This document shows positions 10,377 to 43,502 of a stretch of 64,000 nucleotides of DNA, piece by piece. The stretch spans positions 77,686,001 to 77,750,000 of the forward strand of contig NC_087444.1 in assembly GCF_036321535.1 (NCBI RefSeq), given 5' to 3'. The position numbers were made by a program, and so were the translations under genes. The notes beneath the pieces were generated by a model that was not told the origin of the DNA, made no database searches, and worked only from the letters and a program-made list of their open reading frames with translations. How positions within the stretch are numbered: the stretch's first letter is position 1; every line of letters begins with the position of its first letter. The stretch comes from Camelus dromedarius (Eukaryota).

Positions 10377-15371
<4,995 letters not shown>

Positions 15372-15720: not shown

Positions 15721-15849
15721 GCGCTGGAACAGAAGGGGCGGATCCAGAAGAGACTGGGGCAGAGCCTGGGGCAGTCCAATTTAGACAGAACAGAACAGAC
15801 CCCTCACATCCTGGCTCTACCAGACAGGGCTTCTCACCAGGTGGGACAT

Positions 15850-16035
15850 ACAGCCAAGTGCTAGCTGGTTGTTAAATTTTTAGGAATTTTGTGACCTATT
15901 GTTACACACAATCATGACTAAAAATTAAACTTTTTACTAAATTAATTACTAAAAATTCCAATTAAATAATTGCATTAAAATAAATGTAATCATACTCAAA
16001 ACTCATCACTTCCTATTTTATTATACTTTACTAGC
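15850..16035. mobile_element. Ancient hAT DNA transposon remnant (MER63-like)
   Basis: Motifs ttgttaaatttt-aggaattttg, aaaaattaaa and atactcaaaactcatcacttcct recalled from the MER63 consensus; not searched. Confidence 0.55.
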
Positions 16036-16989
16036 TGGGGATCTTCCTCAGAGTTCTGCTCTTGCCTTCCCAGCAGAAGGCCACACTGCTGTCTACCCTG
16101 TGACTCCCACTACTTTATATTCCGGGTCAAGGAGCTAGAGAATGTGGCTTTGGGTGCCAGACAGACATGGCTGGGCTTACACCTTGTTCTGTCACTTGCT
16201 GGCTGAGAGGCCACGGCCAGGTGACTTAACTTGTCTGTGAGTGCCACAAGGACAGGGACTCAAGTAAGATACATCTCCAGAAAAACCCTAGTGCCCAGCC
16301 CAGGGCACAGAATCCACAGAGCCTTGGTCCTCTGCCTCCTCTCCTCATCCAGCTGCATGAACTTAGACAAGTCAGTCACACCATCTGTGCCTGTTTCCTG
16401 CTCTGTGAAATGGGACTGGGCTCATGCAGCTGGCAGGAGTGTGGCAGATTGAAAGCAGTTCCATCTGCCTTCTGAGGACAGTTCTGGGCACTGGAAAGGA
16501 AATGAAGGCTAAGATTTCAGCGGTCCCTCCAGGAGTGAGTCAGCCAACCCGTGGCTCCTCCTGAGTCAGCCTCAGCCCATTAGAGCCCCAGATCCTGACT
16601 TTCTCCAGCAAAGCTTAATGCTTGTCACCTCCATCACCACCGCTCTCCGCAATGCCTTCTCCATGGAGGGGCCAGAGTAATCTTACAAGTACTCCAAACC
16701 ATGCCACTCCCCTCTAACACCCTCCTGAGGTTTCCCCCTGCAGATAGATCAATCCCAGCCCCATAATTCCACCTCCCAGGTCCCATGGGATCTGGCTCTT
16801 GGCTGTGTCTCTTACATCATGCCCTATCCCCCAACCCCCTACCCCGATCCGGTACCACCCTCCCTCCAGCTACACTGCCTTCTGGCTCTTTTGAGAATAT
16901 ATCAAGCCTGTTCCTGCCCCAGGGCCTTTGCAAGGAACTTGAGGTTCCTCCTGCCTGGAATTTTCTTCCCCTTCATCTTTGTGGGTTTT

Positions 16990-17560
16990 AAAAATTGTGA
17001 TAAAATACACACAACATGAAGTTTACCATTAATGACATTAGGTACATTCACAGCCTTGTGCAACTATCACTACTCTCTAGTTCCAGAAATGTGTCATCAC
17101 TGCATAAGAAGACCTCATACCTATTAATCAGTCACTCCCCATTTCTCCCTCTCCCTAGTCCCTCAATACACTAATTAACTTTTGTCCCTCTATAGATTTG
17201 CCTATTCTAGACATTTCATATAGATGAATTCATATAATATGTGGTCTTTTTTGTCTGGTTTCTTTCACTTAAAATCGTGCGGGTTTTTTGTGGGGGAGGG
17301 CATAGCTCAGTGAGAGTATGCGCCTAGCATGCACAAGGTCCTGGGTTCAATCCCCAGTACCTCCATTAAAAACAAACAAATAAATAAGTAAACCTAATTA
17401 CTCCCTCAAAAAAAAAAAAAGATTAAGAAAAAAGAATAAACAGATCTTTTAAAAATAAAATTAAAATAAAGATAGGAAAAAAAGTGTTTTCAAGGGTCAT
17501 CATGCTATAGCACGAATCAGTACGTCATTTCTTTTTATGCCATTGTATTTCCCCTTCATC
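16990..17560 (-). mobile_element. Old L1 3'-end fragment interrupted by a SINE
   Basis: Typical antisense L1 3' text (tgtgcaactatcac...ctattctagacatttcatata...tctttcactt...tgttttcaagg) flanking the SINE. Confidence 0.7.
17292..17465 (+). mobile_element. tRNA-derived SINE, camelid (Vic-1)-like
   Basis: gggggagggcatagctcagt head with A-box, B-box gggttcaatccc, then ccagtacctcc and an A-rich tail. Confidence 0.8.
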
Positions 17561-18917
17561 TTTACAATCCTCATGCCTTCTTGTCATGCAGATCACAGCC
17601 TAAGTGCTACCTCTTCAGGGAAGCTGTCCCTGACCACCCTTTGTACATCATCTTGGCCCATACTAATTTCCTTCCAAACTGGTCACTGTTTGTAATGGTT
17701 GTAGACTTCTCATTTACCTTGTTAAGCCATGGAACCAGGGATGCCAATGCCATCATCTAACTCAGAACAGATTCAGCCCCGGATTTAGACAAGGACTTCC
17801 TGACTGTAGGAGCCTGAGCGGGTCATGTTAATTCCCTGAAGCACAGCCTTCTCATTTGTCAACTGGGAATAATGATTGTGTCTACTTCATGAGGTTGTTG
17901 GAGGATTATTATCAGAAGCAGTAGCAGTAATAGTAATAATACACAGTACTGTCTTTATAAAGATGTCCCCTCACTCATACATGAGAAATTACTGCATTCC
18001 TTTGGAGAAAAAAATTTTTTTAATCTCATGGGCCTCACAACCTAGGTAACTGATCTGATTTCCCCTTTCCCACTGGCTACTAGAAAGCCTAGGGGGATAA
18101 GTTTGTACTCTGCGCCTTTCCTTAGAACGTGGGAGTACTTTTTGGCTGATTTTAAACTTAACCTGCTGCTCTGAGAGCTCACTTGCCAAATTTCATGGAC
18201 CTATGTCTGCCACCTGTCTGGAATGAGATGGAGGAAAAACCAGTGAAACAACCATCTTTCCTAGACACAGACTGACAGAATTTGTTGAAAGCAGAATGAG
18301 GCGTAGTTGCAACCACTGTCTCTCCTTGTGTAAATCTTTCTCTCATTCTCTGGAGATTTCATTCCCAGATCTTGCACAGCTACTTTGTTTCTTTGATGAG
18401 AGCAAGTTGCTTGGAAGTAAAGTCTGAATTTGCATCTATTAGGGTTCCCAGCATCCAACAGAAGCTGGTACACAGAAGACCTCAGGGAATACAGAATGGA
18501 TGGATGATGCAAGGAAGAAAGGAAGGAAGGGAGGGGAAAATATGGGTAGGAAAATCTATGTGAATCATGGGTGAGGGAGCAGATAAAGTCATGAATAAGT
18601 AAGTGAGTTCTCATTGACTCCTCACAGCAAACATACAGGAGGCATTCCTATTACCATGATTTTTTCAGATGAGGAAACCGAAGGTTGGAGGAGTGACTGA
18701 ATGAATAAATGAAGGAGTGAATGGGACAGTGAGTAGGTGAGAGGATAGATGGATGAAGGGGGTGGGGGTGGGGTTCCCTGTGTGTTTCCAGGATGGGCAG
18801 CTCTATCCCTGCCCTTGTGTGGACTCACCCCTGGAGGTTCCCTCTTGGGTTCCCGGCCCATGCCCCTGCCCACCCCCAACACGGAGCACCGGGCCAGGCC
18901 AGCAAAGTTGCTAAGTA

Positions 18918-18923
18918 TTTATT
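18918..18923 (-). terminator. SYT5: Putative SYT5 polyadenylation signal AATAAA
   Basis: tttatt on + strand, about 340 nt after the stop. Confidence 0.55.
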
Positions 18924-19258
18924 TGGTCCCAGGAGTGGTGCAGGGATCAGACTGGGGCCAGGAGTGGGTGATCCTATGCAGGGAAAAGGGCACTGGGAGT
19001 CAAGGGGATAGTAGGCTGGGGTCACTGATTGTCAAAGCAGAGGGTGGGACCCTGGAGTCGGGGAGGGGAGACTGCCCCCCTCCCCCAGGGGCCCCTGGGG
19101 CTTCTGCGTGGTTGGGGAGTTGGCAAGTTATCATGATTGGAGTAATGGAGGGGGAGAAGGCAGGAATGGGTGGGGGTGTTAGCGTTCAGAGAAGGCTTAA
19201 ATGTGCGCATGGGCGTGGTTTGGGCCAGGAGTCTGGGGTCAGGGCTTGAGGGTGGGGA

Positions 19259-24153
<4,895 letters not shown>

Positions 24154-26473: not shown

Positions 26474-29400
26474 TTAGGCCTCTGTAGCAGCTATGTTCTC
26501 GTAAATCAGGTTCTCATACGTGGCCTCCTTCTCAGCCGGTGCTGAGGATGACTGTTGCAGAAAGCGAAGGATGCACTGGTGCAGGAACACGTACTGGGCC
26601 TGGGGAGGAGGCCCGTGGAGGTGAAGGGTGCCCTCCTGGCCTCAGCCTGCTTTCTTCCAGGGTCCCACCTCCACCCACCTTGTGCCAGAGGAACCCCCTC
26701 ACCTCAGTCTGCACCATCAGTGGCCGGCTTTCTCTCATCTTCCTCATGTAGCTGAAGGGCCCCACGACACCCTCACACTCCAGCTGCCGCAGCAGGACAT
26801 CCAGGGCAATGAGGGTGCCTGTGCGGCCCACACCAGCGCTAGGCAGGGACAAGAAGTGGTCAGACCCTGGGAGGGGAGAGTCTTGACTGATGGAAGGATC
26901 TGTCTTTGGAGCACCTAGGGGTCAGGGTATTCAGCCAGACAGTATTTTGGGGGAATACAGTGTAAGTGGGGGTTATGTAATTAAGCAGGAAGTAATAAGA
27001 AATGACCGTGCGCTGACTTCTATCTATCTGTGAGGCCCTGTTCCAAGTGCCTTACATGCTTTTTTTTTCACTCCTACCACACCTAAGAAGTAGGAACTAT
27101 TAGCATGCCCATTTTACAAATGGGGCAATGGAGGCTGAGCAAGGTGATTGTCCCAGGCCACTTGGGCATTGCTGGGGTTCACACATGGGCAGATGAACTC
27201 CCAAGCTGATACTTAAAAAAAATTTAATGTAAAAGTAACCATTTTAAAGTGGACAATTCAGTGGCATTTAGTCACAGTGTTGTGTAACTGCCACCTCTAT
27301 CTAGTTCCAAAACACTTCTATATCCTCAAAAGGAGAGCCCCATCCCATTAAGCAGTGACTCCCCATTCCCCCATCCCTCCCAGCCCCTGAAAACCACCAG
27401 TTTTCGGGCTCTGTGCATTTGCTTATTCCAAATAGTTCATGTAAACAGAGCCATCCAACATGGGACCTTTCGTGCCTGGCTGCTTTCACTCAGCCAGGTT
27501 CATCTACGTGGTCCTGTGGATTGGTGGTTCAAGCGAATGGCCTTAACTACTGTGCAGAACTCCCTTCTGCACCTGGAGGAAGGGAGGACACTCTACTGAG
27601 GACACTTCCAGTGAATACTACCTGGGGATGGGGATGGTGTCACGACACAGCACAGCAGGGAGGTTAAGGGCTCCACTCTGGGCATCAGCTTGGCCACTCG
27701 CTATTGACCGTGAACCCAGGGACCAGCTTTCTGATGCAGTTTCCTCAGCTCTCCCTTTTGTCATGAGGTTGCCCGGAGGGTCAGCCAGACTGTGGCCGAT
27801 AAGCACTGACCATGATGGAAACCAGAGCTCCCCTATCAGAGGCTGTCCGTCCCTCTGGAACAAACTCCTTCCTCAACCCTCACATTCACATTTGTGAAAT
27901 CTCACCTAAAGAGGCTTCAGCACAAATATCAGGAAAGCAGTTGTCGGGGGAGGCCCCAGCCTGTGAGCCCAAGGAGGTGTCTTCAATGTTTCTTAAAACC
28001 TTTGGCTGCTTCTCCCTCCTGCCCTTCACCTCCTCCCTACATATGCCTCCTCCTGTACCTTTCTATCTTTCCCATCTCTTCACCCCCATCCTCCTTCTCA
28101 GCCTGCATCACAGCCCCTTCACCTTCTGCCTCCATCTCCTCCTCCTCTCTTCCACCTCCTCTGGGAGTTCCCAAGAACCCAGGTAACCCTGGTTTCTGTG
28201 TCCTGAGGGGGCGGTGGTCCCACAGGGAGAGGGCTCCGGGCTGGTCCTCACCTGCAGTGCACAATGGGAGGCCCTCCCTCCATGTTCTGGTCCAGCCACT
28301 GCCGGAGCATCTTCCAGAAGGCCAGCATGGGGTCTGGGGAGTGAGGGACGCTGTGGTCTGGCCAGGTCACGTAGTGGAACTGACGGACGGATAAAGCCCT
28401 CCGCTCTGCCATCTAGAGGGAGGGCGGGTTGTCAGGGGACTCAGGACCCCTGGGGCTGGTTTCTGACAATGGGGCATCCCTGGGGCACACTGCTGTCCCT
28501 TGTGGGAGTGACGGGAGGTGGGATTTCATGGGGAGTTCTGGGGGAAGGGGCTGCCTGGAATGTCACGGGGGAGGAACTGAGGGCAGGGTGTATCTGGCAG
28601 GGTGTCAGGGGGCTTACATGCCAGAGCTTCAGGTCTCGTACTGTCCAGTTCTCCATCACCTCCTCACCCACCAGGGTCACCTGTAGCTGCCCATGGGTGC
28701 AGGGTTGGGAATCTAGAGGCCAGTAATGCTCACACTTCACCTGGGGGAAGACCAGGGGCAGTCAGAGCATAGGAGGCCCCACAGAACCACCCAACCCCAG
28801 TGCCCCTCTGTAGCGTGGCTCTTGTACTCAGTGCCAGGGGATGCCCTCTGCCCTGGTGGCAAGGCAGCACCCACAGGCAGCCAGGCGTAGCTTCATTCCA
28901 GCCAGGAAGACCCCTCCTTCCCCAGGTCATTGAGATCAGCTTCACCCTGCATGTGAACCATTGGATGGACTAGAGGAGACGGAAAGGTTGGAGTCATGTT
29001 GAGGGAATCAGTGAGGGCTGGATCAAGGTCTACACTGGTGTCAGTGTCTGGGGCGGGGTCACGGTTGGACTCAGGGTCAGCACCCAGGACCAAGGTCTCC
29101 TCTTACCCGGCCAGACTCCACGCAGTTGGTCAGCATGACCAGGGTGTGGCTCTGCTGCTCCCACACCAGGCGCCAGAAGTCACCCACAGTCTGGGACAGG
29201 GGGCCCTGGGCTGCTATGAACTCCTGGGAGTTCCAGAGACCCTGGTTGAAGAAAACAGGTAAGTCTGACCTTAACTTCTGAGGCTAACTCAGCATCCTCC
29301 CAGCTCCCAACCATAACCTTACAGGCATGAAGCTGGCGTTGATGTACTCGGAGCCTGGCTCCCCAGGGAGGGGTGTCAGGGGCACGCGGGACCAGTCATC

Positions 29401-32400
29401 TAGGAGAAGAGGCCAGCATTAGCGAGAATGGCGCCACCCAGAGGGGCAAGGAGATGAGGCTGAGACCCAGGGATGGAGGGCGTGCAGAGGTGCAGACGCT
29501 GGGAGCTCAGGGAGAGGCAGAGGGGCCTCGGCTGGGAGGAGCCGGCCAGGGGCTCTCACATCACGGGGTAGGAGCTCAGGGGAGAAGGGACGGGGTCCAG
29601 GGATGGGGTATTGACAAAGTCACAGCTGAGAGTAAAGTCAGCAGAGGCTTACGACTCACAGGGCAGCACGTTTTTGTAACGGTTCTTGATGCTGTTTTCT
29701 GGAGCTGAGGCCATCATCTGGGACTGGCTGTGGTCCTCCAGGGCCAGTTGCTGGGGGCGGAGGTAGAGGAGGGACGCACAGATGCTGGATTTTCTCTGAC
29801 CTCCCCCAGGTATACCCTCACTGCTGCCTCTGTCATCCTAAGCACCCTGCCCCACTCACCCCTTGTGCCCTGGAATTCCATAGCACCCACAGAAATAGGT
29901 CAAGTGTGTGCACCATCTCTGGGGGGCATTGGGGAGGACTGGCAGGACCATGGGGACTGGGGAGGTAGGCAAGAGAGGAGACATCAGGGAAAAACCAAGG
30001 TGTTTCTTTAGGACTGACCCATCGACCCGTCACTAGTGTAAGATTTCAATGAGTTGAAAAGATGGATAATCATGCCCAGGAATTTCTGTGTAAGCCAACA
30101 AAGCATGTGTCACTGCTTTCCGTCCAATCCCAAAGGTGTGGAAATGTCTGGGGCGGGCACGTGGGCCTGGGTGCAGCCCCCTCTGTTCTGTTCTCACCCC
30201 ACCTGGTACTCCACTGCAAAGCCGTAACCGCTGTCCATCTCATTTTTCCTGACATGCTCAGCAAAATCTTCAGCCCGGATGTCCCTGGGGGGAGGGGAGG
30301 GGCAAACAGTTAAACCTCCTTTAATTCTGCGCTCTTGGGATAAAAGAAAAGGGTTTTGTTTTGTCTTGTTTTGTTTGACCTCCCAAGACTTATAGCTGGA
30401 AGTAGGAACCTTTTGACCACCTTCACCCATTTCAGCCTTCTGACACTCCCTCTGGCAACCACCAATCTGTTCTCTGAACCTGTGAGTTCAAGGTTTTTGT
30501 TTTTGTTTTTGTTTCAGATTCTGAATATAAGTGAGATGATACAGTATTTATCTTTCTCTGTCTGACTTATCTCACTCAGTATAATGCCCTCAGGGTCCAT
30601 CCATGTTGTCACAAATGGTGAGATTTTCTTCTTGTTTGTGGCTGAGTAGTATTCCACTGTATAGACAGCTCATAGCTTCTTTATCCATTCACCCATAGAT
30701 GGACACTTAGGTCATTTCCAAGTCTTGGCTGTTGTGAACAATGCTGCTGTGAACAAGGGAGATGCAGATATCTTTCCAAATCACTGATTTTGTTTCTGTT
30801 TCATCAACTCCACTTCTGAGTATACACCCCCAGGAGTTGAAAGCAGGCTCTCAAAGGGGTACCTGTACACCCACGTTCATAGCAGCCCTAATCACAATAG
30901 CTAAAAGGTGGAAGCAACCCAAGTGTCCATCGACAGAAGAATAGATAAGCAAAATGTGGTCTATCCATATAATGGACTATTACCCAGCCTTAAGAAGGAA
31001 GGAGATTCTGCCACAGGCTACAACATGGATGGAACTGGAAGGCATTATGCTGAATGGAATAAGCCAGTCACAAAAGGACAAATAAAAGGACAAATGTGAT
31101 TCCACTCATATGCGGCACCAAGGGTTATCAAATTCATACAACCTGAAAGTAGGATGCTGGAGTCTCCAGGGACTGAGGAGATGGGGGAAATGGNNNNNNN
31201 NNNNNNNNNNNNNNNNNNNNNNNNNNNNNNNNNNNNNNNNNNNNNNNNNNNNNNNNNNNNNNNNNNNNNNNNNNNNNNNNNNNNNNNNNNNNNNNNNNNN
31301 NNNNNNNNNNNNNNNNNNNNNNNNNNAAGCTAGAACACTCCCTCACACCATACATAAAAATAAACTCAAAATGGATCAAAGACTTAAATATAAGACAAGA
31401 TACAATAAACCTCCTAGAAGAAAACATAGGCAAAATATTATCTCACATTCATCTCAACAATGTTCTCCTAGGGCAGTCTGCCCAAGAAACAGAAATAAAA
31501 GCAAGAATAAACAAATGGGACCTAATTAAACTTACAAGCTTTTGCCCAGCAAAGGGAACCATAAGCAAAACAAAACAACAACCCACGGAATGGGAGAAAA
31601 TATTTGCAAAAGATGAAACTGACAAAGGCTTGATCTCCAGAATATATAAACAGCTCATACAACTTAATAAGAAAAAAAACAAACAACCCAATCCAAAAAT
31701 GGGCAGAAGACCTAAACACGAAAAAATGCTCAATATCACTAATTATCAGAGAAATGCAAATTAAAACTACAGTGAGGTATCACCTTACACCAGTCAGAAT
31801 GGCCATCATNNNNNNNNNNNNNNNNNNNNNNNNNNNNNNNNNNNNNNNNNNNNNNNNNNNNNNNNNNNNNNNNNNNNNNNNNNNNNNNNNNNNNNNNNNN
31901 NNNNNNNNNNNNNNNNNNNNNNNNNNNNNNNNNNNNNNNNNNNNNNNNGACCCAGGAATCCCACTCCTGGGCATATATCCAGAAGGAACCCTAATTCAAA
32001 AAGACACCAGCACCCCAATGTTCATAGCAGCACTATTTACAATAGCCAAGTCATGGAAACAACTTAAATGTCCATCAACAGACAACTGGATAAAGAAGCT
32101 GTGGTATATTTATACAATGGAATACTATTCAGCCATAAAAATGAACATAATGCCATTTGTAGCAACATGGATGTCCCTGGAGAATGTCATTCTAAGTGAA
32201 GTAAGCCAGAAAGAGAAAGAAAAATACCATATGATATCACTCATATGTGGAAAGAAGAAGAAGGAGGAGGAGAAGGGGAAGGGGAAGAAGAAGGTAAATG
32301 AACTTAAATATAAAACAGAAACAGACTCACAGACATAGAATACAAACTTTTGGTTGCCAGGGGGAAGGGGGTGGGTAGGAACAGTCAAGGAGTTAGAGAT

Positions 32401-35400
32401 TTATAGATCCTGACAGGTATATATAGAATAGATAAACAAGTTTATACTGTATAGCACAGGGAAATATATACAAGATCTTGTAGTAGCTCACAGTGAAAAA
32501 GAATATGAAAATGAATATATGTATGTTCATGTATGACTGAAAAATTGTACTGTACACCAGAAATTGACACAATGTAAACTGACTATAACTCAATAAAATT
32601 AAAAAAAAAATCTGTTTGGACTCAAAAAAAAGGAAATGGGACTTCTCTCATCTAGGACCACTCCCCTTCTCCTGGGCCACAGTTCCCTGCAGCCCTCTCC
32701 AGCCATGGGGTCTTCCTTCTCCTACACCAGGAACCTCTCCCCTTTCCCTTTGTGTGTACATGTTCTAATCTTGCTTCTGTATTAAAAAGAATCCCCTGAC
32801 CTCATGCCACTCCAGGTCCAGCTCTTTCTCTCTCCTCCCCCCGTAATATAGTGTTATGAATACTGTCCTGACTCAGTTTTGACACCCTGGATGGAGGCTG
32901 GTCAGTTTCCCTTCTTGACATGCTGATTAAATCCACATCCTCACCACCTCCCCTAACAGGATCACACACTCTGGGCTACTATCCATCTGCCCAAATTCTG
33001 CCCCAACCCCAACCCCCAGGAACAGGTACCAGAAAACCAGGCACAGTCCCTACGCCCCAGGACCTGCTGAAATGATTCAAACTAAGCCTGTTTGCCTTGG
33101 ATTGAAACCATGAGAAAGGCTCTTGTTTGAGTGCCCCTCACTTCACGGCCAACCTGGTGCCTCCCCACGTGGCCCTGCAGGGTGTAATGCGTACTCCCTC
33201 TCTTGGGATCTGTGAGTGTAAAAAATCTTCAATGCCAGTCGTCTCCTGATCCAGTGGGCTTACCGTACCTAAACAATAATGAAACCTGTGAAAGCACATT
33301 CAAACTTCTCACGTGGACCAGTTCTCTCTGCTTCCTTCCCATACATCACCGTGGCCTGGTCTCTACACCACGACTCCAGGGGAACAATGACCTTTTGTGG
33401 TTCAAAGTCCCCTTATCTCATTTGCCTCCTTATCTCCAATTCCAAAGGCCACCTCTCAGTCCCTCCTCTGCGTGGGAGCTCAGCAGCCTGTAGTTTCTCT
33501 GACTGCCTCTTCCTTTTTTCTGGACCCGCCCTCTTCCTGAACACCATCTCCTCATGTGCACCACCACTGCCTCTCTGACGGGTGCTTCTCCATCTCCTCA
33601 GTGGGGCCCTCATCCTCTGTTCATCAAACGGTAGGTGTTTCTGGGAGTCTGTCCTTAAGCCCTCTTTTCTCACTGGACACACACGTCTCATGGGGTCTGT
33701 CCACTGACATAGCTTCACTTTCAATCTGCACATCTGCGATTTCTGAATCTTCGTTGCCAGTTTCTACTTCTCACTCCCCTGACCTTCAGCTCTATTTACC
33801 CACTGGCCTCCTGGAAGCTCCACCTGCATGTCCTAGAGGATCATCGCTAGGACATCCAAACATGCACGCTGAGGGTTGGGGATGGCAAAATGCTCAACAT
33901 ACAAGACAGGACAAGACTTGGAGCCCAACAGGTGCAGCAATTTGCTGCAGATGCCATACAAGGCACCGGACAGAGGGTAAGGAGGGGAAAGGGCAAGCAG
34001 GGTGGGACTCTGGCCAGGACAGATACTACCGCAAAGAAGAAACTGGACATCATCTTCCCCATCACTAGTGTTTGCTCTGCCTCATGCGTCTGCCTCGGAT
34101 GGCCACGCCCTCCGTTGACGCCTCATTCTTTTGCACCCAGGCTGTCACAGCTGGTCTCCCAGCTTCCCTTTACTCTCTGTCCCATCTCTCCTCTCTTGAT
34201 CCCTGGGGATCATTCTCACGTAGACACTTGGTGTCACTGACCCAACTAAGGAGGAGTCAGAGAATGGAGACCTTTGCACAAACGTTCTCCTGAACCATGG
34301 ATCTGTTTATCCACCTGACCATTCATCATTGTCTTCACTTGCATGTCCAACAAGCATCTCAAATTCAGCGTGTCCACCACCGAGCTCCCAATACTTTCCC
34401 AAAGCTCCCCCACCCTCCACCCCATGGTCATTCCATCTCAAGCAACAACATTTCCAGTATTCCTGGAGCTCAGGCTAAATTCCTTGCAGTCACTCTTGAG
34501 CCCTCTCTGAACCCCACACTGCACTTCCATTCTCTAACCACATCTGCTGTTTAAACACTCAAACACTGCCTTGAATCTGATTACCTCTCACCATTTCCCA
34601 TTCCAAGACATAACTACCTCTTGTTTGGATTGTAATAGGGAAGAACAAACCTGACTCCATATTGGTCTGTTTCTTTTACTTTAACCTTTTTGCATTTGCC
34701 ACAAGTTCATCACCAAAGGGATGCTGCCTATAAGCTTAAATTACACATAATGGCCCATCTCTGGGAACCCTGCCTCCCAGGTAACCAGCACTGAGCTAAA
34801 ATACCTTTGTTGGGCTCACAGGAAACATCCTGACCAGGCCCCCCTGTGAATGACTGCAGGAAGGAAGGAATCAACACCTCCCCTCTGGAGGCTGACGTGA
34901 AACAGGAGGTGTGTGAATTTACTCCCACCCCTCTTAGTATAAAAGAAGCCTGAATTCTAACTCAGGCAAGATGGTTCTTTGGGACACTAGTCACAACCTT
35001 TACCAACTTCTTTATTAGTGGCTCCTTGTGCTAGAATGTAAGCTCCAAAAGGGCAGGAATCTTTGGTAGATTCACTGTTTCCTCAACACCCAGAACAGCA
35101 CCTGACACTTAACAGGGGCTCCGTTACTGTTTTGTTGGATGAATGAATGGACGTCCCAGAGCTGAGACTGACACCAATTTCACGGCCACCAGTCCAGGCT
35201 CTCAGGGAATGGGGAGTGGCAGATGCATTGTGATCCCTGCCACAGACAGCATTAGCCCCTTCTGAGGCTTGTGGGGGGGATTCACTGATCCTGCCCTCTG
35301 ACCTACCCAGTGACCAGCAAACACCCCAGGATCTGACCTTGACAATGAGTCTTTCAGATGCTCTCCCAAACCTTCCACTCACCTGCAGATCAGATCCCTG

Positions 35401-38400
35401 TGTGCCTGTTTCTTCTCACTCTTCTTACACCTGGGAAAAGGACATTAGGGTGAAAGGCTGGGGAGGGGAGAGAGGCCGGAACCAGGGGTCCTCACCTTTC
35501 CCGCAACCCCCACCCTCCAGGCACCCGGTAAGTCCTGAGCTGAGTCTCACCCCTTCTTCAGGAAGAAAACCAACAAGCCCACCAGGATGAGAAACAGGAG
35601 GACACCGACGATGGCTCCTATGATGACCACTGGAGGAAGAAGGCATGAGGGGCTGTTAGAGTCTGGGTCACCTCTCCTGGTGTCCTATCTCTGCTACCTC
35701 TGTCCTAACCCAGACTGTGATCAGAGGGTCTGCAGGGTAGATGCGAGGGCAGAGAAGGGAAAGGAGAAAGCTTCTGCATAAAGCCCTATTTCCCACTCAA
35801 CCTTTCCTCCCAGGAGCCTGGTCCAAAGACATCACTTTCCCAACTAATCTGCTTTTTAGAGTGACTCTCCCCTTCCTTGGTCTAGACTAGCGATCCTCAC
35901 TGAGGGTGGTTTTGCCCACCAGGAGACATCGGGCAATGTCTGGAGACACTTTCAGTTCTTACAACTTCAGCAGCAGTGCCACTGGCATCGAGCGGGTGGA
36001 GGCTGGGGATGCTGCTCGACACCCTACAGTAATACCCAGGACAGTCCTCACCAGAAAGAGCGATCCAGCCCAAGATCCACAAGGACCTGTCTCAGCAAGA
36101 GTACCCTGGACAGTGGGACCACCAAGCCCAGCCTGGAAGAGCACCCCATGTTCAGTGCAACAAACTCCAGTGTCTCCAGATCAAAGACCCCATCTCCTAA
36201 GAGGCTCTGATTCCTAGGCACTGACTGACGGGGGCCCAGGGAGGCCTATGACCATGGTCAACGGTACATGAGCAAAGATTTCCTGAGGTTCAGACTTTTT
36301 CAAATGTCCCATTGGTGAGTGAAAAATCGTGCGACCATGCTGGAAAAAAATTTGGCAGTTCTTCAAAAGGTTAAACACAGAGTTACCACATGATCTAACA
36401 ATTTCACTTCCGGGTATACACCCAGGAGAAACGAAGACACACACCCACACAGAAATGTGCACACAAATGTCCAGAGCACCATTCAGAACAGCCAAAAAGT
36501 AGGGTCCATCCACGGATGAATGGATAAACAAAATGCATTCTATCTGTACAATGAAATATTATCCGGCAATAAAAAGTAATGAGGTGCTGACACACGCCAG
36601 AACATGGATGAACCTTAGACGCATTATACTAAGTGAGAGAAGCTAGTCACAGAGGACCACATACTGTGTGGTTTTTTTTTTTTTTTTTTGGAAATGTCCA
36701 AAAGAGGCGTATCTATAGAGACAGAAATAGATTACAGACAGACAATGGCTGGTTGGTGGGGAATTAGCGAAACTAGGGGGTGATGGCTTAAGGGGTAATA
36801 CAAATACGGTAAAAAAAAATATCCTAAAATTAACAACGATGATGGTATAATGATGATGAGTATATTAGAAGCCACTGAGTTGCACACTTTAAATGGGTGG
36901 ACTGTTACAGGTTATATGAATGACATCTCAAAGGAGCTGTTTTACAGAAAGCAGGAAACAAAACATAAACAAAAAGGACCCCATGGGGTGGTGAGACTCC
37001 TTCACAACAGGGCCTGATGGGGTCTGAGAGAATGTCATTGTAGCTCTCTGTACCTGTGGGGCTCTGCTCACCTGTGCTCTCAGTGCGGCAGGTCACGGAG
37101 GCAGACCGTGCCTCCCTTCCATCCCAGATGGTTGTGACGGTCGCTGCGTAGGCCTGAGCCGGCCTGAGTCCCGACAAGGACACACCCTTCCCACAGGAGG
37201 ATCCGCTCTGGGAAAACTGCTGCCTGCCCACCTCCACTTTAAAGGCCTCATAGCCTCCCGGGGGGCAGGACCAGGTCAGGATGACCCCGTAGCCCCCCGA
37301 AGCGCTGATGCAGGACACGATGGAGGGGGGGCTTGGATCTGGGTGGAACGGATAGGAGGAATCAGTAGGCTCCATCCAAGGCAGTTTTCTAACTCCCCAC
37401 TCCCCACCAGTCGTGCCAGTAATCTGAGAACTAGCTCATCCTCTTCTTCCCCCAAAACAAAACACCTCTTCTTCCCTCAGTTTCTGTTGCCCCCTAACGG
37501 ACGCACCGCAGGTCGCCTCAAACTACAACTCCCATTAGCCCAGAAAAGGTGCCATCTTGGCCACTTCATAATCTCACCCAAGAGAGTGCACAATGCTACA
37601 TCTCACCTATGGCGGAACTCAGAGTCACCCGGGAGCTGTTGACTCCATTCTTTTCTGCCCACACAGAGAAGTTGTACAAGGTCCCGGGTTCAAGTCCTTC
37701 CACTGTGAAACTGGTGTTGGCTGTGCGTGTGGTCTCAATCGCGTCTCCCTCTCCAGACCACTGGACCCAGTAGGCGTAGCTCTGAAGGTCAGGGCCCTCA
37801 GGCACCTCCCACCTCAGGGTGATGCTGCTGGTGGTCTGAGTCTCCACACTCAGGTTCCTGATGGGGTTGGGGGCTGAGAAATGAAGAAGAAAGATCCAGT
37901 GTCAGCAGGGCAGTAAACGGGGGGGACAGTCAGTGGGCATTGCTGACCCTCAAAGTCAGTTCCCAGTCCTGCCTGAACTACGGGTCCAGGAGATACGGGG
38001 TGTGGGGTCTAGACAGTGCTTCCCAGACTTCCATGTGCATACGTGTCACTGGGGATCTTGCTAAAAGGCAGGTTCTGACTCAGGAGGTCTAGGATGGGAC
38101 TGAGATTCTGCATTTACAGCCAGTTCTCAGGAGATGCTGACGCAGCCCACCCACGGACCACACTTGGGGAGCAAGGATCTAGACCAGTGCTTTCCAGTGG
38201 AATTTCTGCAACAGTGGAAATGCCCTCCCAATGATCATTAGGGTAGATACAAACCCAGTGGGAGACTGGGAGCCCCTCAACGGAGCTCTTGAGCACTTAA
38301 AATATGGAACCAAGCTTGCAATTTTATGCAATTTTAATGAACTTAAATGTACATAGCCACCAATGACTAGGGGCTACCATATTGGACAGTGGAGGTCTAG

Positions 38401-41400
38401 AGCAGAGGAGCTGTCCACCTCAGGGTAATGGAGCTCATGGTCTGAGCTTCCATCTTCAAGCCCGTGACATAGTTGGGAAGTAGGAGAACAAGAGTCAGGG
38501 GGTCAGAGTGTCCACATTCCACAGCACCTAATCCCCCCAGAACTCAGTAACAAGACTCCCCTGCACAGCCATGGTTGCTCAGGAGGATACGCCCTAGTGT
38601 TATGGTCTGTGTTCTCTAGAGTCCTAGAGCCTGACTGATCCCAACGCACAACCCTATGGATATTCTTTCTTCATCTCTCTCATCGTGATCCAAAGAGACA
38701 CTGGGCTAGGGAGTGTGCCACATTCTCCTGTCAGCTCTGCACCATCGTCTATCATCAACCCCGCATTAAAGAAAAAAAAAAAAAGAATCAGAATAAGGGC
38801 TCCTTCTCACCTGTGGCGGCATTGAGAGTCACCCGGGAGCTGTTGACTCCATTCTTTTCTGCCCACACAGAGAAGTTGTACAAGGTCCCGGGTTCAAGTC
38901 CTTCCACTGTGAACCTGGTGCTGGCTGTGCGTGTGGTCTCAATCGCGTCTCCCTCTCCAGACCACTGGACCCAGTAGGCGTAGCTCTGAAGGTCAGGGCC
39001 CTCAGGCACCTCCCACCTCAGGGTGATGCTGCTGGTGGTCTGAGTCTCCACACTCAGGTTCCTGATGGGGTTGGGGGCTGAGAAATGAAGAAGAAAGATC
39101 CAGTGTCAGCAGGGCAGTAAACGGGGGGGACAGTCAGTGGGCATTGCTGACCCTCAAAGTCAGTTCCCAGTCCTGCCTGAACTACGGGTCCAGGAGATAC
39201 GGGGTGTGGGGTCTAGACAGTGCTTCCCAGACTTCCATGTGCATACGTGTCACTGGGGATCTTGCTAAAAGGCAGGTTCTGACTCAGGAGGTCTAGGATG
39301 GGACTGAGATTCTGCATTTACAGCCAGTTCTCAGGAGATGCTGACGCAGCCCACCCACGGACCACACTTGGGGAGCAAGGATCTAGACCAGTGCTTTCCA
39401 GTGGAATTTCTGCAACAGTGGAAATGCCCTCCCAATGATCATTAGGGTAGATACAAACCCAGTGGGAGACTGGGAGCCCCTCAACGGAGCTCTTGAGCAC
39501 TTAAAATATGGAACCAAGCTTGCAATTTTATGCAATTTTAATGAACTTAAATGTACATAGCCACCAATGACTAGGGGCTACCATATTGGACAGTGGAGGT
39601 CTAGAGCAGAGGAGCTGTCCACCTCAGGGTAATGGAGCTCATGGTCTGAGCTTCCATCCTCAAGCCCGTGACATAGTTGGGAAGTAGGAGAACAAGAGTC
39701 AGGGGGTCAGAGTGTCCACATTCCACTGCACCTAATCCCCCCAGAACTCAGTAACAAGACTCCCCTGCACAGCCATGGTTGCTCAGGAGGATACGCCTTA
39801 GTGTTATGGTCTGTGTTCTCTAGAGTCCTAGAGCCTGACTGATCCCAACGCACAACCCTATGGATATTCTTTCTTCATCTCTCTCATCGTGATCCAAAGA
39901 GACACTGGGCTAGGGAGTGTGCCACATTCTCCTGTCAGCTCTGCACCATCGTCTATCATCAACCCCGCATTAAAGAAAAAAAAAAAAAGAATCAGAATAA
40001 GGGCTCCTTCTCACCTGTGGCGGCATTGAGAGTCACCCGGGAGCTGTTGACTCCATTCTTTTCTGCCCACACAGAGAAGTTGTACAAGGTCCCGGGTTCA
40101 AGTCCTTCCACTGTGAACCTGGTGTTGGCTGTGCGTGTGGTCTCAATCGCGTCTCCCTCTCCAGACCACTGGACCCAGTAGGCGTAGCTCTGAAGGTCAG
40201 GGCCCTCAGGCACCTCCCACCTCAGGGTGATGCTGCTGGTGGTCTGAGTCTCCACACTCAGGTTCCTGATGGGGTTGGGGGCTGAGAAATGAAGAAGAAA
40301 GATCCAGTGTCAGCAGGGCAGTAAACGGGGGGGACAGTCAGTGGGCATTGCTGACCCTCAAAGTCAGTTCCCAGTCCTGCCTGAACTACGGGTCCAGGAG
40401 ATACGGGGTGTGGGGTCTAGACAGTGCTTCCCAGACTTCCATGTGCATACGTGTCACTGGGGATCTTGCTAAAAGGCAGGTTCTGACTCAGGAGGTCTAG
40501 GATGGGACTGAGATTCTGCATTTACAGCCAGTTCTCAGGAGATGCTGACGCAGCCCACCCACGGACCACACTTGGGGAGCAAGGATCTAGACCAGTGCTT
40601 TCCAGTGGAATTTCTGCAACAGTGGAAATGCCCTCCCAATGATCATTAGGGTAGATACAAACCCAGTGGGAGACTGGGAGCCCCTCAACGGAGCTCTTGA
40701 GCACTTAAAATATGGAACCAAGCTTGCAATTTTATGCAATTTTAATGAACTTAAATGTACATAGCCACCAATGACTAGGGGCTACCATATTGGACAGTGG
40801 AGGTCTAGAGCAGAGGAGCTGTCCACCTCAGGGTAATGGAGCTCATGGTCTGAGCTTCCATCCTCAAGCCCGTGACATAGTTCGGAAGTAGGAGAACAAG
40901 AGTCAGAGGGTCAGAGTGTCCACATTCCACAGCACCTAATCCCCCCAGAACTCAGTAACAAGACTCCCCTGCACAGCCATGGTTGCTCAGGAGGATACGC
41001 CTTAGTGTTATGGTCTGTGTTCTCTAGAGTCCTAGAGCCTGACTGATCCCAACGCACAACCCTATGGATATTCTTTCTTCATCTCTCTCATCGTGATCCA
41101 AAGAGACACTGGGCTAGGGAGTGTGCCACATTCTCCTGTCAGCTCTGCACCATCGTCTATCATCAACCCCGCATTAAAGAAAAAAAAAAAAGAATCAGAA
41201 TAAGGGCTCCTTCTCACCTGTGGCGGCATTGAGAGTCACCTGGGAGCTGTTGACTCCATTCTTTTCTGCCCACACAGAGAAGTTGTACAAGGTCCCGGGT
41301 TCAAGTCCTTCCACTGTGAACCTGGTGTTGGCTGTGCGTGTGGTCTCAATCGCGTCTCCCTCTCCAGACCACTGGACCCAGTAGGCGTAGCTCTGAAGGT

Positions 41401-43502
41401 CAGGGCCCTCAGGCACCTCCCACCTCAGGGTGATGCTGCTGGTGGTCTGAGTCTCCACACTCAGGTTCCTGATGGGGTTGGGGGCTGAGAAATGAAGAAG
41501 AAAGATCCAGTGTCAGCAGGGCAGTAAACGGGGGGACAGTCAGTGGGCATTGCTGACCCTCAAAGTCAGTTCCCAGTCCTGCCTGAACTACGGGTCCAGG
41601 AGATACGGGGTGTGGGGTCTAGACAGTGCTTCCCAGACTTCCATGTGCATACGTGTCACTGGGGATCTTGCTAAAAGGCAGGTTCTGACTCAGGAGGTCT
41701 AGGATGGGACTGAGATTCTGCATTTACAGCCAGTTCTCAGGAGATGCTGACGCAGCCCACCCACGGACCACACTTGGGGAGCAAGGATCTAGACCAGTGC
41801 TTTCCAGTGGAATTTCTGCAACAGTGGAAATGCCCTCCCAATGATCATTAGGGTAGATACAAACCCAGTGGGAGACTGGGAGCCCAGCAACAGAGCCCTT
41901 GAGCACTTAGAATGTGCTCATCTGTCTTTCTTTCATCAATTACATGTCGAGGCAATACTGTCTTGGATCTACTCAGATAAGTAAAATACCTCTTTATAAT
42001 TGGTTTCACCTGTTCTGACTTATGCACTGTGGCTGATAGAAATCTTGGATCCACAAGCGTGGCTCCCATATGTTTCTGTCGGTCTACGGGCCTGCCGAGT
42101 TCTCATGCGTGTTCTGTCACTGCCTGCCACCTTCCTTTAGGAAATAAAGAAAAACAGTGGTTGCCTCTCACCTGTGGTGGTTTTGAGGGTCTTCTTGGAG
42201 CTAGTGAGTCCATCCTCCACCCACACGGAAAATTCATAGGAAGAGCCAGGGTCAAGTCCCTCCGCTGTGAAAACGGTGTCTGTCGTGTTTCGGCTCTCGG
42301 TTTTGTTATCTCGTCCGGTCCACTGGACCCAGTAGGTGTAGTTCTGCTGGTCCAGGCCACCGGGGGCCTCCGAGCGCAGGGTGATGGAGCTGCTGGTCCA
42401 GGCCTCCACAGTCAGGTTTACGACTGGGTTGGAGGCTGAGAATGGGGAAGAAGGATTCACTGTGAGCAGGGAGCAGATCAGGACTGTCCCTTCCACTGCT
42501 CCCAGTTCCTGCCTCATGTCCAGAAAGGACTAGCTCCATCGGCGCCAGGTGGGGATCGCTGTGCCCACCATGGAGACCTCCCTCTGGAAGCTCACGGGAC
42601 TTGAGGGTGCAATGGCTTTGTGTGGGCAGTGAACTCAGACAGGGGTCACTCACCGTCCGCCCTGGCCCCTGTCCAGCTGCACAGGCCCTGGTGAGATCCA
42701 AGAGGGGGGGAATCAGACACCGAAGCTCACCTCCCCTGACCCCAGTGAGTCCGCCAGCCAGCGACCCTCCCGTCCTCTGCCCAGACCCTGCGAGTCACAC
42801 TGCCTGAAGGAGAGGAGGGACAGCACACAGACTCTCCTCCCGCAGGCTGGGCTCTGACAAAGGTCATCCCATAGTATGTCTGTCTTCTCTGGGTGTGCCC
42901 TGTGTTGGGGGCAGGGGGAGTGGGGAAGGGGCAGGACTCCAGGGACCCAGGAGCTGGGATTGGCTTCACTGATATGGTAGAGAGATAAACTTAATGGTTT
43001 CACTTCCTGAAAAAATACAGCCTTAGAAGACTAAGGCAAGGAAGTAACCAACAAATTGGGAATGAAAGAAGAGTCTGATGTTGGGGACCAGGAGCCAGAC
43101 ATCCAGTCTGAAGGAAAAGGCTGGGGACTTGGACCCCTGGGTCTGAGGGAGGAGCGGGCTGGGGGCCGAGGCTCCTGAGTCTTCGTAAGCTTACCTGTGT
43201 CTTGCCAGTAACCTGAGTTCACTCTCACCGCAGAAGTAGCAATGTCTAAGAGCCCGGGTGTCAGACTCCCCAGCAATCTCCCCCAACCTAGAAACTTGCT
43301 TCCTCTCCAGGGAATTATCAGTCCCTCCCCACTCTGGACCTGAGTTCTGGGACCCCAGCCTCCTCTTTCCTGGGACCCAGGAGTTGGCCCCCCTCTGCTC
43401 CTCTCAGAGGACCCCCCCCACCCCCACTACCCTGAGTCTGGGAGCACTCACCAGCAGCACCAGGCTCCCCAAGGCCCTGAGGCCTCTGCCAGCCCCGGTC
43501 AT
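26474..43502 (-). CDS. PTPRH: Receptor-type tyrosine phosphatase H (SAP-1), 18 coding exons, 913 aa: signal peptide, 6 FN3, TM, one PTP domain
   Basis: Exons 43452-43502, 42654-42687, 42172-42435, 41218-41484, 40015-40281, 38811-39077, 37607-37873, 37072-37338, 35551-35629 (TM), 35383-35430, 30203-30284, 29660-29750, 29323-29399, 29107-29241, 28618-28740, 28252-28412, 26703-26838 and 26474-26599 total 2742 nt in phase. Catalytic motifs [31 protein letters not shown] and MVQTEAQY are intact; the C-terminus contains YENI. Confidence 0.95.
30390..31193. mobile_element. Two oppositely oriented old L1 3' fragments
   Basis: Antisense L1 3' text at about 30390-30800 and sense L1 3' text (ggaagcaacccaagtgtccatc...) at about 30810-31190. 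Confidence 0.75.
31194..31326. other. Assembly gap (133 N)
   Basis: Run of N. Confidence 1.
31327..32610 (+). mobile_element. Younger lineage-specific L1: ORF2 C-terminal part, 3' UTR and poly(A)
   Basis: ORF 31754-32338 gives [10 protein letters not shown]...[18 protein letters not shown]...[18 protein letters not shown]...[11 protein letters not shown] (the L1 ORF2p C-terminus). It ends caataaaattaaaaaaaaaa at about 32590-32610. Confidence 0.9.
31810..31948. other. Assembly gap (139 N) inside the L1
   Basis: Run of N. Confidence 1.
32860..33290 (+). mobile_element. Possible ERV1-class LTR fragment
   Basis: LTR-like U3/R text (...cccacgtggccctgcagggtgt...ctcttgggatctgtgagt...); family not assignable without a search. 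Confidence 0.35.
34631..34995 (+). mobile_element. ERV1-like solo LTR fragment, antisense to PTPRH
   Basis: Starts TGTAATAGGGAAGAACAAACCTGACTCCATATTGG, has a TATAAAA at about 34938-34944, and continues with an R-like gaagcctgaattctaactcaggcaagatggttctttgggacactag. Confidence 0.6.
35889..36100 (+). mobile_element. MER20 (hAT-Charlie) remnant
   Basis: ttttgccc..caggagacat..ggcaatgtctggagaca...actggcatc.ag.gggtggaggc..gggatgctgct.. matches the recalled MER20 consensus. Confidence 0.8.
36230..36940 (+). mobile_element. Old L1 3'-end fragment
   Basis: gttaaacacagagttaccacatgatc...tggataaacaaaatg...catggatgaacctt...cacatactgt...gcacactttaaatgggtg. Confidence 0.75.
37607..41885 (-). repeat. PTPRH: Tandem array of a 1,203-1,204-bp exon+intron unit (4 FN3 exons, about 3.5 units) in PTPRH
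   Basis: Exon starts at 37607, 38811, 40015 and 41218. The introns are near-identical apart from a few SNPs and poly(A) length. The ORF track shows four [30 protein letters not shown] copies and repeated intronic 60-aa ORFs. Confidence 0.98.
38015..38400. mobile_element. MER5-like plus MER3-like hAT remnants carried in each array unit (also near 39219-39604 and 40423-40808, partial at 41625-41915)
   Basis: cagtgcttccca...ttctgactcaggaggtctagg...gagattctgcattt...ggaccacact (MER5-like), followed by ctagaccagtgc...gagcactt..aat..tgg...ttaaat..atagccac...ggctacc.tattggacag (MER3-like). Confidence 0.7.

What the first reader, a model, noticed from the sequence alone, without database searches (positions are those of the whole stretch)
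37607..41885. Very recent or homogenised tandem amplification of a PTPRH FN3 exon: four near-identical domains in 1.2-kb units
Four 267-nt phase-1/phase-1 exons repeat at 1204/1204/1203 bp. Their introns, including embedded MER5/MER3 fossils, differ by only a handful of bases. The symmetric phase means any copy gain or loss keeps the frame, so the ectodomain length of this brush-border phosphatase can change like an accordion. Six FN3 domains are present here, versus eight in human as I recall. SAP-1 acts at intestinal microvilli, including on CEACAM20. Length variation in a luminal, heavily N-glycosylated ectodomain may reflect host-microbe selection or size-based segregation (inference). Intron identity this high implies very recent expansion or ongoing gene conversion, and so likely copy-number polymorphism.
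Basis: partly seen in the sequence, partly recalled or inferred. Interest (0 to 1): 0.8.

Follow-up and report, generated by a model that had tools for sequence, protein, structure and literature searches.

The report
Old, homogenised PTPRH exon array
A camel gut-surface phosphatase gene (PTPRH/SAP-1) carries four almost identical copies of a 1.2-kb unit that each add one protein domain; the array is ancient but is kept uniform within each species and changes copy number between close relatives, so the outer part of the protein changes length in whole-domain steps.

Summary
PTPRH lies on the minus strand. Four 267-nt phase-1/1 FN3 exons (37607-37873, 38811-39077, 40015-40281, 41218-41484) sit in a 1204-bp repeat present 3.54 times (37621-41885). 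About ten differences separate the copies.

The window encodes RefSeq Camelus dromedarius PTPRH (923 aa), which already shows the four domains.

It is not an assembly artefact. In three DNA runs, contigs reproduce a flank-A-(B-A)n graph, including the B|A junction. The repeat has 3.7-5.4 times the flank's word depth.

It is not a recent amplification. Alpaca, Bactrian and wild camel carry the same array with the same outer boundaries. The whole unit also aligns to each unit of the hippopotamus and horse arrays. Units are 99-100% alike within a species but about 95.5% alike between camel and alpaca, which is concerted evolution.

Annotated copy number is 4 (dromedary), 3 or 2 (Bactrian), 5 (wild camel) and 3 (alpaca). 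Depth suggests 3.6, 5.4 and 4.6 copies in three animals, so polymorphism is likely but unproven.

RNA contigs join array exon to array exon. The exon diverges as fast as its introns (pN/pS 1.2-2.4).

Of 62 mammalian PTPRH proteins, 39 hold near-identical FN3 runs. This is a new member of a known kind. The scan had not noted it before.

The parts
37621..41885 (-). Near-identical tandem array: 3.54 units of 1204 bp, arranged A-B-A-B-A-B-A. A copies lie at 37621-38275, 38825-39479, 40029-40683 and 41232-41885. B copies lie at 38276-38824, 39480-40028 and 40684-41231.
   Evidence: The Logan contigs of three DNA runs break exactly at these borders: a 655-nt A contig, and a B contig that runs over the B|A junction.
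41886..41916 (-). Upstream edge of the older homology. These 31 nt carry 6 mismatches to the internal units, so the edge has escaped homogenisation. The alpaca array starts at the orthologous point.
   Evidence: alignment columns 2-30.
37598..37620 (-). Downstream edge of the older homology. It covers the last 14 nt of the last array exon plus the splice donor, and has 6 differences from the internal units. Two of them are shared with the last unit of Bactrian and wild camel.
   Evidence: columns 686-708.
41218..41484 (-). Array FN3 exon a: 267 nt, phase 1/1. It carries Gln at residue 82.
40015..40281 (-). Array FN3 exon b: 267 nt, phase 1/1.
   Evidence: Pfam fn3, E 5.7e-13.
38811..39077 (-). 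Array FN3 exon c: 267 nt, phase 1/1. It carries Ser at residue 53.
37607..37873 (-). Array FN3 exon d, the last of the array: 267 nt, phase 1/1. It has Ser at residue 55 (an N-T-S sequon) and a diverged tail.
   Evidence: An RNA contig joins it to the next exon at the canonical sites.
38406..38477 (-). Relic of a second FN3 exon inside segment B. It keeps the first 24 codons, has no AG acceptor and runs into stops and transposon-like sequence. Copies also lie at 39610-39681 and 40814-40885.
   Evidence: tblastn at 58% identity to the live exon; sequence read. It is part of the unit that is shared with hippopotamus and horse.
38045..38140 (.). Palindromic MER5-type DNA-transposon fossil in the intron part of segment A, repeated in every unit.
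   Evidence: Rfam mir-544 at 58.6 bits, below the gathering score of 66.5, with a hit on both strands. MER5A1 copies match miR-544b (PMC5424272).
42172..42435 (-). First FN3 exon (FN3-1): 264 nt, 54% protein identity to the array exons, and an orthologue of alpaca domain 1.
37072..37338 (-). Membrane-proximal FN3-like exon: 267 nt, phase 1/1, single copy.
   Evidence: Pfam fn3 at 25.3 bits. Its depth equals the flank depth in the DNA runs.
26477..43502 (-). The whole PTPRH gene. The start codon is at 43502. Transmembrane and juxtamembrane exons lie near 35630 and 35429. Phosphatase-domain exons run from 30307 to 26477.
   Evidence: Exact 6-residue words in the window cover 918 of 923 residues of RefSeq XP_064346099.1.

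Best explanation
This is the FN3 exon array of camel PTPRH (SAP-1, an R3 receptor tyrosine phosphatase). It is an old tandem array of a 1.2-kb unit.

**What a unit holds**
- one 267-nt phase-1/1 FN3 exon
- its intron
- a dead second exon
- old transposon fossils

**How it evolves**
- The array predates the split of camels from horses.
- Unequal crossing-over and gene conversion between the units keep them almost identical within a species. The same processes add or remove whole units.
- The outermost 20-30 nt of the array escape this homogenisation.
- In the dromedary the array has been swept by one exon type (type II). Its units last shared an ancestor well after the split from Bactrian camels.

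**What it does to the protein**
- Both exon ends are in phase 1, so every gain or loss keeps the reading frame.
- Each change lengthens or shortens the glycosylated ectodomain by one 89-residue domain. The transmembrane and catalytic parts are untouched.

**Shown here:** the architecture, the concerted pattern, the copy-number differences between assemblies, splicing of consecutive array exons, and near-neutral protein evolution.

**Inferred:** the recombination mechanism, copy-number polymorphism within dromedaries, and any effect of ectodomain length on function.
For: **The array is real**
- The contig graph is L-A-(B-A)n-R. Word depths are: X1, flank 4.4, A 16.2, B 11.1; X7, 8.24, 44.4, 36.3; X10, 35.3, 160.8, 127.6.
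- (A-B)/flank is 1.16, 0.98 and 0.94, as the architecture predicts.

**Shared architecture**
- The alpaca array (period 1187) starts and ends at the points orthologous to camel 41916 and 37601.
- Bactrian camel has period 1211 and 3 exons. Wild camel has 5 exons.
- The full unit aligns at 73-80% to six hippopotamus units and four horse units.

**Concerted pattern**
- Substitutions per unit: 4/1204 within dromedary, 19-27/1200 between dromedary and Bactrian, 42-57/1185 between camel and alpaca.
- Domains form species-specific clades with support 96/88 and 96/74. FN3-1 is orthologous across the camelids at 100/99.
- Edges are less homogenised than the interior in both camel and alpaca.

**Turnover**
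- The Bactrian array equals the wild-camel array minus two units. Cb_2 and Cf_4 differ by 3 substitutions, Cb_3 and Cf_5 by 1.
- The annotated proteins differ by multiples of 89 aa.

**Expression**
- One RNA contig joins array exon to array exon at the predicted sites. Another joins the last array exon to the proximal exon.

**Generality**
- 39 of 62 mammalian PTPRH proteins have at least two FN3 domains that are 90% or more alike. Profile hits range from 2 to 13 per protein in that set; a hedgehog protein added has 12.
Against: - Copy number from contig word depth is indirect. The tool itself warns that this depth is not a copy number, and the errors are 0.25-0.7 copies.
- No read spans the array.
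- Some differences between assemblies may be collapse artefacts. The 736-aa Bactrian model comes from an older annotation.
- The one RNA run carries the Bactrian-type exon letters, so it does not show expression in the dromedary itself.
- Recombination was not observed. It is inferred from patterns.
- Independent re-amplification from one surviving unit in each lineage would give the same within-species identity. It is a form of the same unequal-exchange process.
Confidence: 0.85

Rival explanations
1. Assembly artefact. The true locus holds one or two units, and the assembler over-expanded a repeat or stacked haplotypes.
For: Near-identical 1.2-kb tandem copies are a classic site of assembly error. 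Two of the ten differences are homopolymer-length changes, at 41529 and 41179.
Against: - In three DNA runs from different studies, A has 3.7-5.4 times the flank depth and B has 2.5-4.4 times.
- A contig crosses the B|A junction.
- Copy-specific letters of the assembly (37710, 38455, 38499, 38594, 37630) reappear as alternative letters or split contigs in the runs.
- Three other camelid assemblies show the same array.
Confidence: 0.03
2. A truly recent, dromedary-specific amplification of a formerly single exon, as the first alternative in the reader's title has it.
For: The units differ by only about 0.3%. All four dromedary exons are of one type.
Against: - Alpaca, Bactrian and wild camel have the same A-B-A array with the same outer boundaries.
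- Hippopotamus and horse have arrays of the homologous unit, including segment B.
- The array is 3.54 units long, not a whole number. That needs an older A-B-A state.
Confidence: 0.05
3. Adaptive accordion. Domain number and loop residues are under diversifying selection, for example from gut microbes that bind the SAP-1 ectodomain, or from a need to match the height of the brush-border glycocalyx. On this reading the changes are not neutral drift in the length of a spacer.
For: - pN/pS between camelid array exons is 1.15-2.4.
- About 19 non-synonymous against 3 synonymous variable sites were counted among 15 exon copies.
- Codon 49 has four states, and sequons are gained and lost.
- Domain number ranges widely across mammals.
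- Chicote et al. noted species-specific FN3 loop patterns in human and mouse PTPRH (PMC5336234).
Against: - The excess of non-synonymous changes is not significant against neutrality (P = 0.22).
- Exon and intron diverge at the same rate: 12/267 against 20/401 and 21/486. Relaxed constraint explains this equally well.
- Ptprh knockout mice have mild phenotypes (review PMC9900141).
- No ligand of the ectodomain was looked for here.
Confidence: 0.25

Closest known systems
LPA kringle IV type 2 repeat (human apolipoprotein(a))
   Same: A tandem array of a kilobase-scale genomic unit that carries whole-domain coding exons. Units are near-identical, introns included. Copy-number change is in frame and alters protein size. 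The array is hard to resolve with short reads (general knowledge; the KIV-2 VNTR is described in PMC11201333, listed).
   Different: The LPA unit is about 5.5 kb with two exons and reaches tens of copies. Its polymorphism and phenotypic effect are proven. Here the unit is 1.2 kb with one live exon, there are 2-5 copies in camels, and polymorphism is only suggested.
Domain-repeat copy-number variation in mucosal surface proteins (DMBT1 SRCR repeats, CR1 long homologous repeats)
   Same: Extracellular, glycosylated domain arrays at host-microbe interfaces that expand and contract by unequal exchange between repeated exon blocks (from general knowledge; not tested here).
   Different: Those proteins bind microbes or complement directly. 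For the SAP-1 ectodomain no ligand is known, and its role may be only that of a spacer.
Other R3 receptor tyrosine phosphatases (PTPRJ/CD148, PTPRB, PTPRO)
   Same: The same architecture: FN3 domains mostly encoded by single phase-1/1 exons, one transmembrane segment and one phosphatase domain (PMC5336234; Pfam).
   Different: According to PMC5336234, FN3 loop patterns are conserved between species in the other R3 members but are species-specific in PTPRH. The homogenised, copy-variable array seen here fits that exception.
RefSeq model XP_064346099.1, PTPRH of Camelus dromedarius
   Same: The window encodes it. Exact words cover 918 of 923 residues, and the same four domains appear in the same order with the same copy-specific residues.
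   Different: The database entry is only a predicted protein. It says nothing on the genomic repeat, its age, its homogenisation or its copy-number differences.

Membership tests
PTPRH (SAP-1), R3 receptor-type tyrosine phosphatase | Ectodomain made only of FN3 domains, one transmembrane segment and a single catalytic PTP domain | tested here: met
   Pfam on the encoded protein gives fn3 in 6 stretches and Y_phosphatase at E 2e-79. The transmembrane exon lies near 35630.
PTPRH (SAP-1), R3 receptor-type tyrosine phosphatase | Orthology to named PTPRH proteins rather than to PTPRJ, PTPRB or PTPRO | tested here: met
   The window encodes RefSeq PTPRH of Camelus dromedarius. The best homologues are all PTPRH of mammals.
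PTPRH (SAP-1), R3 receptor-type tyrosine phosphatase | Conserved neighbourhood (SYT5, PTPRH, TMEM86B, PPP6R1) | tested here: inconclusive
   C2-domain, TMEM86B-like and PPP6R1-like open frames are seen at about 21 kb, 49 kb and 57-64 kb. A C2-domain gene follows alpaca PTPRH. The neighbours were named from memory and were not searched.
Tandem exon array under concerted evolution | Repeat units more alike within a species than between species, introns included | tested here: met
   Within a species, 0.1-1.2% between internal units. Between dromedary and Bactrian, 1.6-2.2%. Between camel and alpaca, 3.5-4.8%. Species-specific clades appear in the tree.
Tandem exon array under concerted evolution | The array is older than the species compared (shared architecture and boundaries) | tested here: met
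   The outer boundaries are the same in alpaca. The full unit, including segment B and the relic exon, is homologous to hippopotamus and horse units.
Tandem exon array under concerted evolution | Copy number changes by whole units, in frame | tested here: met
   Both exon ends are in phase 1 and the exon is 267 nt. There are 2, 3, 4 and 5 array domains in Camelus models and 3 in alpaca. The unit-by-unit correspondence between Bactrian and wild camel implies a two-unit difference.
Copy-number polymorphism within the species (coding VNTR) | Different copy numbers in different individuals of one species | tested here: inconclusive
   Depth ratios give 3.6 +/- 0.55 and 5.4 +/- 0.66 exon copies per haploid genome in two organism-A runs, and 4.6 +/- 0.25 in organism B (coded name), which lacks the Bactrian exon letters. 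The difference is about 2 standard errors. The proportions of copy-specific letters also differ between runs. There are no spanning reads.
False duplication (assembly artefact) | Read depth over the repeat equal to or below single-copy depth, and no reads over the unit junction | tested here: not met
   Depth is 2.5-5.4 times the flank depth, and contigs cross the B|A junction.

The most novel reading that the evidence does not exclude
The number and surface loops of PTPRH FN3 domains are a fast-evolving, selected trait across mammals (2 to 13 profile-detected domains). On this reading, gut microbes or the brush-border glycocalyx drive the change, and natural copy-number alleles alter how SAP-1 reaches substrates such as CEACAM20. 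A second unexcluded oddity is that each unit's segment B gives rise to an abundant short RNA over the relic exon.
Probability: 0.2. Interest if true: 0.75.

Novelty: new member of a known kind. Interest (0 to 1): 0.5.

Why it matters
**A natural test of ectodomain length**
- SAP-1 is a brush-border phosphatase whose ectodomain has no known ligand.
- Close relatives, and probably individuals, differ by whole FN3 domains while the catalytic part stays the same.
- That gives a natural allelic series for asking whether ectodomain length matters. The size-dependent segregation proposed for CD45 and CD148 is the obvious model; I cite it from general knowledge.

**A warning for comparative work on PTPRH**
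- Its FN3 domains are not one-to-one orthologues between species.
- Domain numbering, residue mapping from human or mouse, and short-read variant calls inside the array are therefore unreliable.

**A pattern across mammals**
- Near-identical FN3 runs occur in 39 of 62 proteins.
- I found no paper describing this in the library searched.

Tried and rejected
**Searches that gave nothing**
- Tandem Repeats Finder found nothing, because its longest period is 500.
- Literature searches for PTPRH with 'concerted evolution', VNTR or positive selection gave nothing on the FN3 array. One broad search was badly framed and useless.
- A second protein search for further dromedary models found none.

**The RNA depth peak over the relic exon**
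- I tested whether it is a known small RNA. It is not.
- The best Rfam matches were SNORD94 at 17.5 bits with no C box and SNORA57 at 14.3 bits.
- Folding was unremarkable on both strands.

**Ideas considered and rejected**
- A chimeric origin of the last array exon from the lost penultimate FN3. Alpaca's last exon has the ordinary tail, and BLAST could not place the first 54 nt of the downstream intron.
- Positive selection as a demonstrated fact. The excess of non-synonymous changes is not significant.

**Deliberate limits**
- I did not lay reads on the whole array, because the tool turns away stretches with a long repeat. I laid one unit plus a single-copy flank instead.
- One contig look-up failed for lack of a free slot and succeeded on retry.
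Full report
**1. The observation**

The repeat is real.
- Direct-repeat families of 300 nt recur at 1204, 1204 and 1202-1203 bp.
- A lag scan gives 98-100% identity from about 37600 to about 41890.
- Aligning the units shows that the near-identical tract is 37621-41885, which is 3.54 units.
- Only about ten differences lie inside it, two of them homopolymer-length changes.

The structure is A-B-A-B-A-B-A.
- A is 655 bp: 400 nt of intron plus the first 255 nt of the exon, in gene sense.
- B is 549 bp.

The gene runs on the minus strand.
- Four exons of exactly 267 nt lie at 41484-41218, 40281-40015, 39077-38811 and 37873-37607.
- Each has an AG acceptor and a GT donor, and both ends are in phase 1.
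- The low-coordinate edge of the array lies inside the last exon, whose final 14 nt differ.
- Beyond both edges, homology continues for 20-30 nt at lower identity, to 37598 and 41916.

Each unit also holds two older features.
- Each B carries a relic of a second FN3 exon. It keeps 24 codons, has no acceptor and runs into stops and transposon-like sequence.
- The intron part of A holds a palindromic element that matches Rfam mir-544 below threshold.

**2. What gene and whose genome**

The window encodes RefSeq XP_064346099.1, PTPRH of Camelus dromedarius (923 aa).
- Exact six-residue words found in the window cover 918 of the 923 residues.
- The four domains appear in the same order with the same copy-specific residues.
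- Pfam finds fn3 in six stretches and one Y_phosphatase domain.
- The six FN3 domains are FN3-1 (42172-42435), the four array exons and a membrane-proximal exon (37072-37338).
- A human isoform has seven profile hits plus the proximal domain, which makes eight.

**3. Real, or an assembly error?**

The read-laying tool turns away stretches with a long repeat. I therefore laid one unit plus its single-copy flank (36870-38824) on Logan contigs of three DNA runs from different studies and one RNA run.

The contigs break exactly as an L-A-(B-A)n-R graph requires.
- A flank contig overlaps the start of A by 30 nt.
- An A contig covers 37621-38275.
- A B contig runs over the B|A junction.

| Run | Flank depth | A depth | B depth | (A-B)/flank |
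|---|---|---|---|---|
| X1 | 4.4 | 16.2 | 11.1 | 1.16 |
| X7 | 8.24 | 44.4 | 36.3 | 0.98 |
| X10 | 35.3 | 160.8 | 127.6 | 0.94 |

- The architecture predicts one more A than B, and the last column agrees.
- The estimated number of array exons per haploid genome is 3.6 +/- 0.55, 5.4 +/- 0.66 and 4.6 +/- 0.25.
- The tool warns that word depth is not a copy number, so these are estimates.
- A single-unit locus is excluded.
- Copy-specific letters of the assembly reappear in the runs, but in different proportions. At 37710, X7's main contig carries the letter that only the last exon has in the reference. At 37630, about half of the copies in X7 and X10 carry T, against one in four in the assembly.

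**4. Recent or old?**

I fetched the PTPRH loci of alpaca, Bactrian camel and wild camel.
- Alpaca has the same array with period 1187 and three exons. It starts and ends at the points orthologous to camel 41916 and 37601.
- Bactrian camel has three exons and wild camel has five, both with period 1210-1211.

| Comparison | Substitutions per unit |
|---|---|
| Within dromedary | 4/1204 |
| Between wild-camel units 2 and 3 | 1 |
| Dromedary against Bactrian | 19-27/1200 |
| Camel against alpaca | 42-57/1185 |

- In both camel and alpaca the first part of the first unit is the least homogenised.
- A tree of FN3 domains puts the four dromedary array domains in one clade (96/88) and the three alpaca domains in another (96/74). 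FN3-1 of the two species pairs as orthologues (100/99).
- The whole camel unit, segment B included, aligns at 73-80% to each of six hippopotamus units and four horse units.
- Warthog has three 2171-bp units that are 100% alike and share only the A part. In pika only the exon aligns.
- The array is therefore older than the split of camels from horses and has evolved in concert ever since.
- Nearby flanks differ by 1.25-1.37% between dromedary and Bactrian, against 0.33% between dromedary units. The dromedary units thus coalesce well after that split.

**5. Turnover**

The Bactrian and wild-camel arrays correspond unit by unit.
- Cb_2 and Cf_4 differ by 3 substitutions, and Cb_3 and Cf_5 by 1.
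- Cb_1 is a mosaic of Cf_1 and Cf_2/3. Bactrian therefore equals wild camel minus two units.

Two exon types exist.
- Type I is alpaca-like. Type II is derived and differs at five sites clustered within 66 nt.
- Bactrian reads I-II-I.
- The dromedary is type II throughout.

Annotated proteins are 736, 825, 923 and 1003 aa, which differ by multiples of 89 residues once a signal-peptide splice difference is allowed for. Some of this spread may be assembly collapse.

**6. Expression**

The RNA run carries the type I exon letters, so it comes from a Bactrian-type animal.
- One contig joins the end of an array exon to the start of an array exon. The 11 letters between the two laid parts are the exon tail.
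- Another contig joins the last array exon to the proximal exon at the canonical sites, with one letter changed.
- Array-exon depth is 5-10 times that of the single-copy exon.
- Several array exons are therefore spliced in a row.

**7. Selection**

- Between camel and alpaca the exon diverges as fast as its introns: 12/267 against 20/401 and 21/486.
- pN/pS is 1.15-2.4.
- Among 15 exon copies, about 19 variable sites are non-synonymous and 3 are synonymous.
- This rejects strong purifying selection (P = 1e-5 for omega 0.2) but does not reject neutrality (P = 0.22).

**8. Generality and novelty**

- Of 62 mammalian PTPRH proteins, 39 have at least two FN3 domains that are 90% or more alike.
- Profile-detected domains range from 2 in bovids to 13 in a porcupine within that set; a hedgehog protein checked separately has 12.
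- Human domains 2 and 4 are 96% alike.
- The only hint in the literature I could find is a remark that FN3 loop patterns of human and mouse PTPRH look species-specific (PMC5336234).
- Searches for PTPRH with 'concerted evolution', VNTR or positive selection found nothing on this.
- The kind of system is well known from LPA KIV-2 and similar arrays. This is a new member of that kind, and the protein model is already in RefSeq.

**9. Verdict**

- The 'homogenised' reading and the frame-keeping accordion are supported.
- 'Very recent amplification' is wrong as to origin.
- Polymorphism within dromedaries is likely but unproven.
- Adaptive meaning is open.

Noticed in passing
window 38388-38519 (segment B, over the relic exon 38406-38477): In RNA run X25 the word depth here is 8,600-20,000. 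It is about 800-1,500 on the array exons, 66 on the A intron and 0 on the rest of B. The DNA runs show no extra copy. No Rfam family matches and the fold is unremarkable. It could be a stable intron fragment, a small RNA, an antisense transcript or a library artefact.
   Followed up: partly
window 37339-37606 and the FN3 tree: Camel and alpaca lack the conserved, longer penultimate FN3 domain. That domain forms a one-to-one orthologous clade in horse, hippopotamus, pigs, ruminants, pangolin, ferret and a bat. In camel the last array exon is followed, after 67 nt, by sequence homologous to the intron that follows the penultimate exon in horse. This points to an old deletion.
   Followed up: partly
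window 42172-42435 (FN3-1 exon): The dromedary exon is 264 nt, one codon short. It has TCG (Ser) where the Bactrian, wild-camel and alpaca proteins have the conserved core Trp of the FN3 fold. This is either a real change in the first domain or an assembly error. It was not checked in reads.
   Followed up: no
window 43431-43502 (exon 1): The dromedary RefSeq model uses a donor 21 nt downstream of a perfect GTGAGT donor, which adds seven residues to the signal peptide compared with the Bactrian and wild-camel models. This is probably an annotation difference.
   Followed up: no
L005 11936-14449 (hippopotamus PTPRH): A second tandem duplication of about 1.7 kb, 99-100% identical, covers the penultimate FN3 exon region, downstream of the six-unit main array.
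   Followed up: no
L004 2903-9117 (warthog PTPRH): Three units of 2171 bp are 100% identical to each other. Only the A intron and the exon are homologous to the camel unit. The rest holds a dispersed repeat seen nine times in the locus.
   Followed up: no
window 37895-38293 (intron part of A): The RNA run covers this 400-nt stretch just upstream of the exon at depth 66, while the rest of the same intron (B) has none. Coverage starts close to the A/B border. This could be an alternative exon extension or start site, or contaminating DNA.
   Followed up: no
window 31194-31326, 31810-31948 and 3206-3336: Three runs of N, each 131-139 letters. The two near 31-32 kb lie inside a LINE-1-like insertion in a PTPRH intron.
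   Followed up: no
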